IMG/VR virus record: IMGVR_UViG_3300017963_000190
Location: 186,001-250,000 of that record
Direction: 5' to 3' (one strand)
Length of the DNA stretch: 64,000 bases
Below the pieces are notes generated by a model, which saw nothing but the letters and a program-made list of their open reading frames with translations, ran no database searches and was not told the DNA's origin. This document shows positions 294 through 59,732 of the stretch, piece after piece. The position numbers and the translations under genes were made by a program. Every line of letters begins with the position of its first letter. Position 1 is the first letter of the stretch.

Positions 294-304
294 CTTGTAA
301 AATA
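294..304 (+). promoter_or_regulatory. CTTGTAAAATA motif (putative phage promoter); further copies at 24476, 29274, 31366, 38845, 44618, 47955, 53054, 59718(-), variants at 9437 and 37653
   Basis: Recurrent 11-mer located shortly upstream of gene or tRNA starts. Confidence 0.65.
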
Positions 305-371
305 CGAGAGTGCGGCAAGCAATAGATTCACAGAACCAGAAAACTGCTGATTCACGAAAGGAGTGACGAGC

Positions 372-1691
372 ATGGCTAAGAGATCGCGTCGGATGCGTGG
401 AAGGCATTCGATTTCAGATGCACCAGGAGGCAGCTATGGGCCTAAGTGGCACGAGATGCTTACGTACATCACGAAGCCAAAAAAGGGGAAGCTGCGAGAG
501 GTTCGTATTGCTGGAGGGTTTTTTGTAATCTTCCAGCACTACGTGAAATTCCGTAACCGAAAGAATGCGATTTCTGGTTACTATGAGCTGTGCCCAAACT
601 GGAATTGGGAGACCGGTGAGTTCAGGCAGGGACCTGATGCCACCTGTCCCATCTGCGCAGATTTCAACGATCGAGACCTTCCCGAGCACTTGAGGATGTT
701 CGGTAGCTTCCGCTACTACTTTGACGCCTTCGACGTCACGATGGCTAAAGGTAACGGTGGCGAGACGATCTTCGGTGTCGCCTTCGTCAACAAGTACGGT
801 AAAAACGATTTGGCGTCCCTCGCGGATATTCTGGGCAATGAGGTGGATGATGAGGAGAATGGCATCTCGGTCCACTGGTTCCTCGATGAGAATGCAAAAG
901 ACGCAAAAGATCGTATGCGCTTCCACCAGGGACAAAAGATCCCGATTCGCTACGATGAGGACCGCGGCCTTTATTTGATGAAGGGTGGCAAGAAAAAGAT
1001 CTTTAAGGGTGAGCCGACCGACTTCGCGGAGATCATCACTCCCAAGTCTGGTGATGAGATCAAAAACGATCTCCAACGCAACGGCTGCTACCGTGAGCTG
1101 GAGAGCTACTTGGAGTCTCAAGGGGACGACGATATCTCTGCAGATGTTCCTGGGTGGGGTGACGACGGTGAGGAGGCAGAGGAAGAGAAGCCGAAGCGCA
1201 AGCCGCGTTCCTCTCAGAAGAAGTCGGGCAAGGGTGGCGGCAACGCTAAAGGAAAAGGCAAAAGCAAGCCTAAGTCCAAGCCCAAGCCGAAAGGAAAGGG
1301 CAAAGGTAAAGAGAAGTCCAAGAAAGCCGAGGAGGTGGAGACGCCTCCAGATGATGACGAGTGGGGATCTTCCGACGAGGGTTCACCTGGCGACTGGGAT
1401 GACGATCTAGGAGATTCTGGTTCCGACGCCGCAGATGAGGACTGGGGCTCGTCCTCTGACAGTGATGAGAGCTCAGGCGAAGGTTGGGATGATGAAGGCT
1501 CGGACGACTCTGGCTCCGAAGAAGCCTCCGATGACTCTGATGATGGTGATGTGGATGGTTGGGGCGAGGCTTCTCACGACGACTCCTACTTCGGAGACGA
1601 TGATGGAGACGATGATTGGGGGAGCTCCTCCGATGAAGCCGGCGACTCGTCTGACGATGATGGGGATGCGGACGACCCTGAGGACTGGTAG
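372..1691 (+). CDS. Putative ssDNA-binding protein (gp32-like) with Lys-rich linker and very long acidic tail
   Basis: AAGGAG RBS; H..CP..CPIC Zn-type motif; acidic C-terminus; lies upstream of recA. Confidence 0.55.
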   Translation: MAKRSRRMRGRHSISDAPGGSYGPKWHEMLTYITKPKKGKLREVRIAGGFFVIFQHYVKFRNRKNAISGYYELCPNWNWETGEFRQGPDATCPICADFNDRDLPEHLRMFGSFRYYFDAFDVTMAKGNGGETIFGVAFVNKYGKNDLASLADILGNEVDDEENGISVHWFLDENAKDAKDRMRFHQGQKIPIRYDEDRGLYLMKGGKKKIFKGEPTDFAEIITPKSGDEIKNDLQRNGCYRELESYLESQGDDDISADVPGWGDDGEEAEEEKPKRKPRSSQKKSGKGGGNAKGKGKSKPKSKPKPKGKGKGKEKSKKAEEVETPPDDDEWGSSDEGSPGDWDDDLGDSGSDAADEDWGSSSDSDESSGEGWDDEGSDDSGSEEASDDSDDGDVDGWGEASHDDSYFGDDDGDDDWGSSSDEAGDSSDDDGDADDPEDW

Positions 1692-1710
1692 TTAGTAGAG
1701 GCAGCTGCCT

Positions 1711-2064
1711 GTGATGAATCTGGTGCAGTTAAGCGCGCGAAAATATCACGGAGAGGTAGTGCGTGTTTCTTGGGACGTAGCTATAGCCCTCAATAACCTC
1801 GGCGCGGAGCACTTGCTGCTCATCTCGCAGGAAGCCGATGAGGCTGAAATGCTACAAAGCGTCGTCACCGGGTTTTTGGCTCACCGGCAGCTGCCTCTAT
1901 ATGCCGCCCATGTTCTAGTGAGCTTGGGTAATGATGCCGCCACACAACTCGCCGTCGCAGTGGTTCCTCAAGTAAGGTACTACCGCGATGCTGCTGAGGT
2001 GGGGCGTCGATGGGGCACCGTAAATTACGAGGCTTTAGCCTCCCTTTTAGGGCTTTCTAGGTGA
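1711..2064 (+). CDS. Hypothetical protein, possible thioredoxin-like fold without CxxC
   Basis: AVVPQVRYYRD resembles the cis-Pro strand of thioredoxins. Confidence 0.3.
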   Translation: MMNLVQLSARKYHGEVVRVSWDVAIALNNLGAEHLLLISQEADEAEMLQSVVTGFLAHRQLPLYAAHVLVSLGNDAATQLAVAVVPQVRYYRDAAEVGRRWGTVNYEALASLLGLSR

Positions 2065-2071
2065 GCGCACG

Positions 2072-58465: not shown

Positions 58466-58699
58466 TTATGTGTTTTTTACCACCTCTCTAGTCCAGCGAA
58501 GAGCTCCAAGCTCTAGTTGGTTTTCTGATTCCTTTACATCCGCTTGCTCCCCAGCAGCAATGCGCTGGGAATAGGACAGACCATCTTTGGCCATCTGCAG
58601 CTGGCTCTTCACTTCCACCTCCAGCTGCTTGATGCGCCGGTCGAGGAAAAAGAGAGCTCGCTCTTTGGACACTGTGGGATCGATGTTTTCTGCGGACAT
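58466..58699 (-). CDS. Small helical hypothetical protein
   Basis: AGGAG RBS. Confidence 0.55.
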   Translation of the reverse strand: MSAENIDPTVSKERALFFLDRRIKQLEVEVKSQLQMAKDGLSYSQRIAAGEQADVKESENQLELGALRWTREVVKNT

Positions 58700-58700
58700 G

Positions 58701-58892
58701 TTATCTCCTGGAACTTACTCTGCACTGCCCGGCTTGATGATAGGTACCACACTCACTGCAATAACTTACTCTAAAGTCGCTTTGCTTTCGGCTTAACCGA
58801 TCAAGCTCACGTTCAAGGCGTGATACCGTTGCCTCTAGTTCTGCTACCCTTTTCTCCAGCAGTGCGCTGTTCTCTTTTTGTTGATCCGCCAT
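58701..58892 (-). CDS. Small coiled-coil/Zn-finger protein
   Basis: Heptad repeat; CSECG..H....C. Confidence 0.55.
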   Translation of the reverse strand: MADQQKENSALLEKRVAELEATVSRLERELDRLSRKQSDFRVSYCSECGTYHQAGQCRVSSRR

Positions 58893-58894
58893 AG

Positions 58895-59629
58895 CTAGCC
58901 TAGCAGATATCCGAAGACCGCTTCTCCCACCGATTTCGCTGGAGCCTCTACCGAGTTCGCTTCCTCCCTGGCGAATTTGATCGCCTTGAGCAAAGCCTGC
59001 ACCCTTTTCTGGAGCTCCTTCTTTCGCGCGGCAGTTACCGCCCCAGAGTGTTTTACAGTGACCCAGTGTCCTACGACCTGATCCTCCGTGATCAACTGCG
59101 TCTGGGCTGGGTGGTTATCTGTGGCATCATAAAGCACGATTGGCTTTTGGACCTTCTTTGTACGCGTCGTACGCTGCGCTGTGGACTTGAACAAGCTTGT
59201 TGCAGGGTCTTCCGTCCAGTCGTAGGCTGGGTCCAGCACAGGCAAGTGCTCGATGGCCGTGTTGAGATCGGTTACTTGCTTCTCCAGAAATAGCAGGTGC
59301 GTCGCCGGAACAGCCTTCAGAATGGTGACACCACCAACCACGACGTCGGCTTTGGCCTCGCAGTTTGCATGGTCCTTGGCTGCCACCACGTCGAAGTGTT
59401 CAGTCATGGATTCGGCGATATCTTGCAGAACTTGCTCAGCGTTTAGCTGGACAAGTTTCTTTTCGTCTGGCAGCTCCTCCCCTTCTTCATCGGTTTTCTC
59501 GAAGGTTTTTGCGAAGCCGTCAAAGAGCGCCGGTTTCTGGATGGACTTATAGAGCTCGGTGACGAGTTTGTACACCCGGCTCTTGATGCCTTTTTCTACT
59601 GCGATCACTTGGTGCAGCTTAGTTGCCAT
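58895..59629 (-). CDS. Conserved-looking hypothetical protein flanked by tRNA-like RNAs
   Basis: GGAG RBS; promoter TTGACA-17-TATAAA at 59703-59675; KLHQVIAVEKG...VPATHLLFLEKQ...HPAQ. Confidence 0.75.
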   Translation of the reverse strand: MATKLHQVIAVEKGIKSRVYKLVTELYKSIQKPALFDGFAKTFEKTDEEGEELPDEKKLVQLNAEQVLQDIAESMTEHFDVVAAKDHANCEAKADVVVGGVTILKAVPATHLLFLEKQVTDLNTAIEHLPVLDPAYDWTEDPATSLFKSTAQRTTRTKKVQKPIVLYDATDNHPAQTQLITEDQVVGHWVTVKHSGAVTAARKKELQKRVQALLKAIKFAREEANSVEAPAKSVGEAVFGYLLG

Positions 59630-59732
59630 GATAATGTTTCTCCAATCAGTTTGAATTTGACATTGTCAAGCTCATTTATAAGCCGACGTTTGCCTGCTGT
59701 CAAGCAACACATGCAATTATTTTACAAGTTGA

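What the first reader, a model, noticed from the sequence alone, without database searches (positions are those of the whole stretch)
294..59728. Recurrent CTTGTAAAATA motif: putative phage-specific promoter class giving leaderless transcripts
Seen: about 11 copies (294, 9437, 24476, 29274, 31366, 37653, 38845, 44618, 47955, 53054, 59718 minus), always co-oriented with the downstream gene. Several end 5-8 nt before an ATG or tRNA 5' end (24493, 44634, 53073, 29292, 37671). A separate TTGACA-17-TAnnnT class also exists. Inference: two temporal promoter classes; the sigma-like gene at 1-264 is a candidate reader.
Basis: partly seen in the sequence, partly recalled or inferred. Interest (0 to 1): 0.6.

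Follow-up and report, generated by a model that had tools for sequence, protein, structure and literature searches.

The report
Phage-specific promoter motif CTTGTAAAATA
An uncultured 260-kb "jumbo" phage carries a conserved, gene-oriented 14-base signal (cAtCTTGTAAAATA) that behaves like a second promoter class, probably read by a phage-encoded sigma factor; some copies sit so close to genes and tRNAs that the transcripts would have almost no leader.

Summary
CTTGTAAAATA occurs 7 times exactly in the window, against 0.01 expected, and all 11 listed sites exist. The window is part of a 260-kb metagenomic phage genome with 23 copies at one mismatch or fewer; 16 of these are intergenic and co-oriented with the next gene.

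A complete 350-kb relative, with proteins about 49% identical, has 36 copies against 2 for a control pattern. There the motif is the top 7-mer upstream of genes, and its core recurs upstream of orthologous genes while the flanks have diverged. More distant relatives carry TGTAAA-only variants or a different motif.

The motif has no -35 partner. Neither phage shows an RNA polymerase of its own. A 477-aa sigma-70-like protein, whose 3' end is window 1-264, is the only sigma shared by both motif-bearing genomes.

I read the motif as a -10-type promoter class for non-early genes, probably dependent on that sigma. "Leaderless" is only partly right. Most sites have Shine-Dalgarno leaders, and the ATG at 44634 is not the real start. 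The DprA-like gene (24493), probably 53073, and two tRNAs in the window (29292, 37671) do start 9-11 nt after TGTAAA.

No RNA data exist, so no transcription start is shown. This is a new member of a known kind.

The parts
1..264 (+). 3' end (last 87 codons, region 4) of the 477-aa sigma-70-family gene 'sigma A' (genome 184831-186264). Candidate reader of the motif.
   Evidence: Sigma70_r2 hit at E = 1.8e-10. AF2 model with pLDDT 79 aligns over its full length to E. coli and Vibrio sigma-70 in holoenzyme structures. Best PDB sequence matches are SigA chains. 48 homologs of 37-71% identity occur in syntenic metagenomic phage contigs.
294..304 (+). Motif, exact. Lies 30 nt after the sigma A stop codon. 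The next gene starts at ATG 372 after a 67-nt leader with AAGGAG.
   Evidence: The same motif sits at the orthologous place in relatives L066, L020 (TTGTAAAATAcgaga) and as TGTAAA variants in L064, L022.
9437..9447 (+). Motif variant CTTGTAAAACA in the last codons of the SbcC-like gene. ATG 9460 follows 12 nt later.
   Evidence: The identical variant sits at the orthologous place in G001 (167711).
24476..24486 (+). Motif, exact. Lies 13 nt after tRNA-Tyr and 6 nt before ATG 24493 of a DprA/SLOG-like gene. Best leaderless-mRNA candidate.
   Evidence: The N-terminus MPIYAGIGSR matches the ortholog's MNYAGIGTR, so 24493 is the true start. No usable Shine-Dalgarno sequence is present.
29274..29284 (+). 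Motif variant ATTGTAAAATA. Lies 12 nt after tRNA-Glu(ctc) and 7 nt before the 5' end of tRNA-Gly(tcc) at 29292.
31366..31376 (+). Motif, exact. Lies 13 nt after tRNA-Cys. The likely start is ATG 31406, after a 29-nt leader with AGGAG, not TTG 31385.
37653..37663 (+). Motif variant GTTGTAAAGTA, 7 nt before the 5' end of tRNA-Glu(ttc) at 37671.
38845..38855 (+). Motif, exact. ATG 38891 follows after 35 nt with AGGAG.
44618..44628 (+). Motif variant CTTGTAAAATT. The real start of the downstream gene is ATG 44685 (GGAGG-caaa-ATG), not 44634.
   Evidence: The G001 ortholog begins at the residue equivalent to M18.
47955..47965 (+). Motif, exact. ATG 47980 follows after 14 nt with GAGG.
53054..53064 (+). 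Motif, exact. Lies 8 nt before ATG 53073 of a 126-aa CxxC zinc-ribbon-like ORF with no Shine-Dalgarno sequence. Second leaderless or very-short-leader candidate.
   Evidence: No ortholog was found to confirm the start.
59718..59728 (-). Motif, exact, on the minus strand. Lies 2 nt after tRNA-Leu (minus strand) and upstream of a sigma-70-type TTGACA promoter and the DUF7873 gene (58895-59629, minus strand).
   Evidence: The motif follows local gene orientation, not the orientation of the genome arm.
52567..52596 (+). Example of the other class: TTGACA-N-TTAACT sigma-70-type promoter, ending 6 nt before ATG 52603. Other examples start at 36292, 45871, 47229, 49547, 63239 and 60586 (minus strand).

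Best explanation
cAtCTTGTAAAATA is a single-element, -10-type promoter class of this jumbo phage and its close relatives. It has no -35 partner.

Proposed mechanism:
1. Host core RNA polymerase uses it once it is equipped with a phage-specified factor. The most likely factor is the conserved 477-aa sigma-70-like protein 'sigma A'.
2. In this genome the sigma A gene has a host-type TTGACT-N17-CATACT promoter. In several relatives it carries the motif itself.
3. The motif class drives the non-early genes: replication, recombination and nucleotide metabolism genes, many tRNAs, a holin-like gene, and the head of the long operon holding the one identified structural gene (baseplate wedge).
4. The host-type TTGACA-N17-TAnnnT class drives a block of small early genes at 19-62 kb and some tRNAs.
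5. Transcription would start about 6-7 nt after the motif.

Most transcripts then carry short leaders with a ribosome-binding site. A minority start at, or 1-3 nt before, the ATG or the mature tRNA 5' end.

Shown: enrichment, placement, orientation, conservation, sigma identity, absence of a detectable phage RNA polymerase.
Inferred: promoter function, start-site position, which factor reads the motif, and timing.
For: Enrichment:
- 7 exact copies in the window against 0.01 expected.
- 10 exact and 23 copies at one mismatch or fewer in the genome, against 0 and 1 for the reversed control pattern.

Placement:
- 16 of 23 copies (G000) and 27 of 36 (G001) are intergenic and co-oriented, while only 13-16% of the DNA is intergenic. 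Binomial p is below 1e-6 and 1e-12.
- Unselected flanks add c-(a/g)-t on the 5' side. No -35 element appears.

Independent genome:
- The complete 349,793-bp relative G001 has 17 exact and 36 near-exact copies, against 2 for the control.
- TGTAAAA is its top upstream 7-mer.

Footprinting:
- There are 136 reciprocal-best orthologs with median identity 49%.
- TTGTAAA co-occurs upstream of orthologs (6 shared, 5 and 9 private, 116 neither; Fisher p = 2e-4), with diverged flanks and similar distances.
- Orthologous sites after sigma A and upstream of the nuclease keep the motif through five relatives. The divergent primase/nuclease spacer carries it on both strands.

Geometry:
- TGTAAA ends 9-11 nt before the first base of the DprA-like ATG, the 53073 ATG, a G001 183-aa ORF and three tRNAs.
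- Sigma-70-type -10 boxes in the same genome sit 6 nt before an ATG and 11-12 nt before tRNAs.

Reader:
- No T7-like or multisubunit RNA polymerase domains were found in G000 or in complete G001.
- Sigma A is present in all relatives. The second sigma of G000 has no ortholog in G001.
- The motif changes with sigma A divergence: CTTGTAAAATA at 63% identity or more, TGTAAA(c/a) at 50-58%, GTTAATCTTTAG at 37%.
- The motif sits upstream of the sigma A gene itself in L020, L064 and L022.
Against: - No transcription start data exist. No public RNA run holds the sequence.
- Sigma A keeps an R-E-x-x-R-Q recognition helix in region 4.2, yet the motif has no -35 element.
- Its region 2.4/3.0 substitutions are the same across homologs whose phages carry different motif variants. 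Specificity changes therefore cannot be read from the sequence.
- In L022 and L064 the T that would be the last base of a TAAAAT hexamer is not conserved, so the -10 register is uncertain.
- TG abuts the hexamer, which is not the canonical TGn extended -10 arrangement.
- Relatives with sigma A at 46-48% identity (L024, L065) show no TGTAAA at the orthologous sites.
- Few sites lie in the roughly 100-kb stretch that holds the baseplate-wedge gene, so a further undetected late class is possible.
Confidence: 0.62

Rival explanations
1. The motif is a promoter, but it is read by the host's own primary or alternative sigma without any phage factor, as a strong -10-only promoter. The phage sigma would do something else, for example read the TTGACA class or a class not detected here.
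For: TAAAAT is a 5-of-6 match to the TATAAT -10 consensus (established knowledge). Sigma A retains the residues that in primary sigmas contact a TTGACA-type -35 element (alignment; the residue roles are recalled from memory). The host is unknown.
Against: The invariant CTTG block directly abuts the hexamer, which is not the TGn extended -10 arrangement. The phage's obvious host-type promoters are TTGACA-N17-TAnnnT with UP-like tracts. The motif variant tracks phage lineage and sigma A divergence.
Confidence: 0.15
2. The motif is the binding site of a phage DNA-binding regulator (activator or repressor) that overlaps weak promoters, rather than the element contacted by a sigma. This would resemble T4 MotA boxes or phage repressor operators.
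For: Several small helix-turn-helix proteins are encoded nearby. The motif is longer, at 14 bp, than a plain -10 box.
Against: The motif is asymmetric, single-copy per site and strictly strand-specific. It lies as close as 6-8 nt to an ATG or a tRNA 5' end, which leaves no room for a separate downstream -10 element. No second conserved element accompanies it.
Confidence: 0.12
3. The motif acts at the RNA level, as a processing site (for example releasing tRNAs) or as a translational operator.
For: Four window sites lie 2-13 nt after a tRNA 3' end (24476, 29274, 31366, 59718), and many lie upstream of start codons.
Against: Most sites are not next to tRNAs. Distances to start codons range from 6 to about 120 nt. 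The motif occurs in divergent intergenic spacers on both strands, pointing at each gene. It precedes tRNAs as well as ORFs, which argues against a translational operator.
Confidence: 0.06
4. The motif is a polar DNA signal (Chi- or KOPS-like, oriented with replication) or a remnant of repeated or mobile DNA.
For: Motif orientation switches with the two genome arms at about 178 kb.
Against: The motif is strongly intergenic, unlike Chi or KOPS. At 59718 it follows a local inverted gene module rather than the arm. Only 11-14 nt are conserved and the flanks are unrelated.
Confidence: 0.03

Closest known systems
Phage sigma-dependent middle/late promoters lacking a -35 element (T4 gp55 TATAAATA; phiEco32 gp36 -10-like promoters). 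Recalled from the literature, not tested here.
   Same: A short A/T-rich single element, about 10 bp upstream of the start, used by host core polymerase with a phage-encoded specificity factor. It separates non-early genes from early genes that use host-type promoters.
   Different: The sequence is different (cAtCTTGTAAAATA). The candidate factor is a large protein (477 aa) with full sigma-70 architecture and an N-terminal helical extension, not a minimal gp55-type protein. No biochemical evidence exists.
Extended -10 (TGnTATAAT) promoters of bacterial primary sigmas
   Same: A -10-like hexamer (TAAAAT) with conserved bases immediately upstream replaces the -35 element.
   Different: TG directly abuts the hexamer (TTG-TAAAAT), so G sits at -13 rather than -14. 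Four to seven upstream bases are conserved, not two.
Bacillus phage SPO1 gp28 / gp33-34 sigma cascade. Recalled, not tested here.
   Same: Phage-encoded sigma-70-family factors redirect host polymerase in a large phage.
   Different: SPO1 promoters are bipartite (-35 plus -10). Here there is a single block, and only one conserved sigma was found.
Leaderless mRNAs (common in Actinobacteria, Deinococcus and archaea) and leaderless tRNA transcripts (Nanoarchaeum). Recalled, not tested here.
   Same: A promoter element lies about 7-10 nt upstream of the ATG or the mature tRNA 5' end, with no Shine-Dalgarno sequence.
   Different: Only a minority of sites show this here: 1-2 mRNAs and 2 tRNAs in the window. 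About 79% of the phage's genes have a Shine-Dalgarno sequence at one of their possible starts. The actual 5' ends are unknown.

Membership tests
Bacterial/phage sigma-70-family promoter (-10-type element) | Over-represented, intergenic, and co-oriented with the downstream gene | tested here: met
Bacterial/phage sigma-70-family promoter (-10-type element) | TAnnnT hexamer with invariant A at position 2 and T at position 6 | tested here: inconclusive
   TAAAAT is present, with T at the last position in 38 of 43 sites in G000 and G001. In the L022 and L064 variants that T is not conserved.
Bacterial/phage sigma-70-family promoter (-10-type element) | -35 element 16-18 bp upstream | tested here: not met
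   Information content upstream is below 0.45 bit. Only a weak AA(T) signal appears 12-14 nt before the motif.
Bacterial/phage sigma-70-family promoter (-10-type element) | Primary transcript 5' end 6-8 nt downstream of the hexamer | not testable with these tools
   No RNA run holds the sequence.
Extended -10 promoter | TG at -15/-14, one base before the hexamer | tested here: not met
   TG abuts TAAAAT in all 43 sites.
Leaderless mRNA | True start codon within 0-3 nt of the expected start site, with no Shine-Dalgarno sequence | tested here: inconclusive
   Met for 24493, where the N-terminus is conserved in the ortholog. Not met for 44634, where the true start is 44685 with GGAGG. Plausible but unconfirmed for 53073. 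Most sites have leaders with a Shine-Dalgarno sequence.
Sigma-70 family (the protein at window 1-264) | Region 2 and region 4 domains, and a sigma fold | tested here: met
   Sigma70_r2 scores 40.9 bits against a cut-off of 24. Region 4 scores only 11.7 bits, but it aligns to SigA region 4.2 with a 4-residue deletion. Foldseek top hits are sigma-70 chains at E = 2.6e-10.
Phage-encoded RNA polymerase promoters (T7-like or phiKZ-like) | A phage RNA polymerase gene is present | tested here: not met
   PF00940, PF00562 and PF00623 give no match in G000 or in complete G001. The PF00940 control rang in no control genome, so that search is uninformative. Very divergent split subunits could also be missed.

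The most novel reading that the evidence does not exclude
A divergent phage sigma with full sigma-70 architecture recognises a contiguous 14-bp single-block promoter. It places the start site exactly on the first base of some mRNAs and of mature tRNAs. Part of this phage's large tRNA set would then be made as 5'-triphosphate tRNAs that need no RNase P, and some proteins would be translated from truly leaderless mRNAs in a genome where most genes use a Shine-Dalgarno sequence. The motif and the sigma would co-evolve across a whole clade of uncultured jumbo phages.
Probability: 0.15. Interest if true: 0.7.

Novelty: new member of a known kind. Interest (0 to 1): 0.42.

Why it matters
It gives a testable transcription map for an uncultured lineage of jumbo phages (260-350 kb, up to 37 tRNA genes) from sediment and seawater metagenomes. 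The map has host-type early promoters, one conserved phage sigma, and one phage-specific promoter class. The motif can be used to delimit transcription units and to annotate relatives. The sigma-motif pair could serve as an orthogonal expression part. The tRNA genes placed 7 nt behind the motif raise a specific question about 5' maturation of phage tRNAs.

Tried and rejected
- Megablast of window 1-12000 against the phage collection found no match. tblastn of the SbcC-like and sigma proteins found only distant hits below 35% identity.
- The search for related loci with the single sigma protein found nothing. The alignment A1 was needed.
IMG/VR loci were used instead.
- The sequencing-run search found only DNA holders (sediment and seawater metagenomes). 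Read laying was therefore not used, since it could not show starts.
- The generic sigma-70 and terminator scan of window 22000-41999 was not above its shuffles and was uninformative.
- PHROGs and Pfam found nothing for most downstream genes. Rfam found nothing in L008 and L009.
- A genome-contig scan with the second sigma, run to guess the host, found no relative. The host remains unknown.
- A literature search for the motif string returned nothing relevant.
- A reading of TTGTAA as a -35 hexamer was rejected. No -10 element lies 16-18 nt downstream, and the start site would fall inside the tRNAs.
- A third, late promoter class was looked for by k-mer enrichment in both genomes. None was found.
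Full report
**Context**

The window is bases 186001-250000 of a 260,067-bp IMG/VR virus record. The record has 52% G+C and is estimated to be 74% complete. Genes run on the minus strand from 1 to about 178 kb and on the plus strand from there on. The genome has 37 tRNA genes, 33 of them in the window.

Nothing close exists among 50,697 deposited phage genomes. The DNA is held by sediment and seawater metagenomes only.

**Observation**

CTTGTAAAATA occurs 7 times exactly in the window, against 0.01 expected. It occurs 11 times at one mismatch or fewer, against 0.55 expected. 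One of them, 37653, has two mismatches.

Genome-wide there are 10 exact and 23 near-exact copies. The reversed control pattern gives 0 and 1. Sixteen of the 23 copies are intergenic, or within 40 nt of a gene end, and point at the next gene. Only 16% of the genome is intergenic, and the binomial p is below 1e-6.

The copy at 59718 lies in a small minus-strand module (tRNA-Ser, tRNA-Leu, a DUF7873 gene) inside the plus-strand arm. It follows the local orientation, which rules out a replication-oriented polar signal.

Aligning 43 good sites from two genomes shows the following:
- Unselected 5' flanks read c-(a/g)-t, giving the consensus cAtCTTGTAAAATA.
- There is a weak AA(T) signal 12-14 nt upstream.
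- The downstream sequence is purine-rich.
- There is no -35 element.

**Other motif classes**

Strand-aware k-mer enrichment upstream of genes puts two signals on top in this genome and in the relative: cTTGACA and TGTAAAA.

The TTGAC-N16-18-TAnnnT class has 48 intergenic co-oriented sites. Thirty-three of them lie in a block of small genes at 20-60 kb, and 7 lie in the window.

No third class appeared.

**Relatives**

The sigma-like ORF ending at window 264 is 477 aa long. It has 48 homologs of 37-71% identity, all in syntenic metagenomic phage contigs.

One relative, G001 (IMGVR_UViG_3300018080_000098), is complete at 349,793 bp with terminal repeats. I fetched it whole. It shares 136 reciprocal-best orthologs with the window's genome, at a median identity of 49%.

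In G001:
- It carries 17 exact and 36 near-exact motif copies, against 2 for the control.
- Twenty-seven of the 36 are intergenic and co-oriented.
- The TTGTAAA core co-occurs upstream of orthologous genes, with Fisher p = 2e-4, at similar distances and with unalignable flanks.

At three orthologous spacers followed through seven relatives, the motif persists as TTGTAAAATA where sigma identity is 64-100%. It persists as TGTAAA(c/a/t) at 50-58% and is gone at 46-48%. The divergent primase/nuclease spacer carries the motif on both strands in five relatives.

A distant relative, G005 (sigma 37% identical), has its own upstream motif, GTTAATCTTTAG.

This is the pattern expected of a lineage-specific cis-regulatory element that evolves together with its reader.

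**Who reads it**

No T7-like or multisubunit RNA polymerase domain is detectable in either genome. The T7-like search had no positive control, so that one result is uninformative.

The genome has two sigma-70-family genes:
- Sigma A, the 477-aa ORF.
- Sigma B, a 296-aa protein with regions 1.2 to 4, at 40287-41177.

Sigma B has no ortholog in complete G001, which nevertheless has the motif class. Sigma A is therefore the only shared candidate.

The sigma A AF2 model (pLDDT 79) aligns over its whole length with E. coli and Vibrio sigma-70 in holoenzyme structures. By sequence, its C-terminal half is closest to SigA chains and, among phages, to the rpoD of Microcystis phage MaAM05.

The alignment shows:
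- The WWIRQ core of region 2 is conserved.
- The adjacent positions are substituted (AITRAI becomes KIFGSI, and PVHLYE becomes PGSVLE).
- There is a 4-residue deletion in the region 4.2 helix-turn-helix.
- The R-E-x-x-R-Q helix is retained.

The functional meaning of these changes is inference only.

In this genome the sigma A gene has a TTGACT-N17-CATACT promoter. L066 has TTGACG-N17-TATCTT. In L020, L064 and L022 the motif itself sits upstream of the sigma A gene. This fits early expression followed by self-reinforcement, but it is not proof.

**Leaderless claim**

| Site | Finding |
|---|---|
| 24493 (DprA/SLOG-like) | True start; its N-terminus matches the G001 ortholog. It lies 6 nt after the motif and has no usable Shine-Dalgarno sequence. 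|
| 53073 (CxxC ORF) | Plausible. The CxxC motif is at residues 7-10 and there is no Shine-Dalgarno sequence. It is unconfirmed. |
| 44634 | Not the start. The ortholog begins at the equivalent of M18 (window 44685), which has GGAGG 4 nt upstream. |
| 31385 (TTG) | Superseded by ATG 31406, which has AGGAG upstream. |

In G001, a 183-aa ORF starts 6 nt after a motif that directly follows a tRNA.

tRNA-Gly (29292), tRNA-Glu (37671) and, outside the window, tRNA-Arg (genome 258135) begin 9-10 nt after TGTAAA.

The gap from TGTAAA to the first base of the product is thus 9-11 nt in all these cases. That is the gap expected if TAAAAT acts as a -10 box with the start about 7 nt downstream.

Sigma-70-type -10 boxes in the same genome show similar tight geometry. 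One lies 6 nt before ATG 52603, and others lie 11-12 nt before two tRNAs.

Most motif sites, however, are followed by 12-120 nt containing GGAG or GAGG. About 79% of the genes have a Shine-Dalgarno sequence at one of their possible starts.

"Leaderless" therefore describes a minority of sites, not the class.

**What the class drives**

Downstream genes include:
- the ribonucleotide reductase large subunit;
- a PD-(D/E)XK nuclease;
- the gene after sigma A, which heads the RecA-like, SbcCD-like and clamp-loader block;
- the DprA-like gene;
- a holin-like gene;
- several tRNAs;
- the first gene of the long minus-strand operon that contains the baseplate-wedge gene.

The simplest reading is a two-tier programme: host-type early promoters first, then this class for the rest. 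Timing is untested.

**Limits**

- No RNA data exist, so no transcription start is shown.
- The host is unknown.
- The -10 register is uncertain, because the last T of TAAAAT is not kept in the 50-58% relatives.
- The link between sigma A and the motif is correlative.
- Gene calls come from my own codon-bias caller. Individual starts were checked only where stated.

**Verdict**

The motif is a real, conserved element, most likely a phage-specific promoter class. This is a new member of a known kind, namely phage sigma-dependent single-element promoters, found in a novel uncultured jumbo-phage lineage.

Noticed in passing
genome 19-50 kb (L001:19900-L003:9900), outside the window: Twenty copies of a conserved element, GGTTAAACCCTCACGCGTTACCAT (followed by ...GTCAACCC). 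Most lie roughly 80-170 nt upstream of a gene start, ahead of strong TTGACA-N17-TAnnnT promoters that share the spacer cgtaacaagGCGACTTAT and an A/T-rich upstream tract. The function of the repeat is unknown.
   Followed up: partly
genome 19-66 kb (L001-L004): CTCTATACAAAA occurs 13 times, mostly in intergenic DNA next to GGATCC-rich stretches. It is unexplained.
   Followed up: no
L010:14740-14830 (upstream of the sigma A gene) and L066, L020, L064, L022, L065 about 30-50 nt before their sigma genes: A conserved AGAGTAACTA-like block lies in the 5' leader of the sigma A gene in six relatives that are otherwise unalignable there. It may be a regulatory element of sigma expression.
   Followed up: no
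L003:287-1177 (-): A second, complete sigma-70-family gene (regions 1.2, 2, 3, 4; 296 aa) sits under an early-type promoter. It is absent from the complete relative G001, and no close cellular homolog was found in the species-genome collection.
   Followed up: partly
window 22821-63352: The window holds 33 tRNA genes covering most amino acids (37 in the genome). The 350-kb relative G001 has only 18. Several tRNAs lie directly behind promoter-like elements with predicted leaders of 0-5 nt.
   Followed up: partly
window 52567-52605; genome 25562 (-): Sigma-70-type promoters end 6-7 nt before an ATG that has no Shine-Dalgarno sequence. Leaderless geometry is therefore not confined to the CTTGTAAAATA class.
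   Followed up: partly
L050-L059 (G005, 197-kb relative): This relative has its own recurrent upstream motif, GTTAATCTTTAG(t/g), with about 10 intergenic co-oriented copies, and no CTTGTAAAATA class.
   Followed up: partly
L023/L024:1-556; L064:7920-9890: Relatives carry ribonucleotide reductase and another gene interrupted by inteins with LAGLIDADG domains. The reductase product is 2201 residues long.
   Followed up: no
L009:14583-14712 (leader of the ribonucleotide reductase gene, minus strand): A 119-nt leader follows the motif, with a G+C-rich hairpin (ggggtcgaggcgggtggcctcgtgccc). A comparable G+C-rich stretch occurs in G001. Rfam found nothing.
   Followed up: partly
L008:18173-19753 (-): A 1.5-kb stretch behind an exact motif copy (genome 159743) has only a low-coding-score 359-aa GTG ORF that starts 5 nt after the motif. 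It is unclear whether this is a gene or a non-coding transcript.
   Followed up: partly
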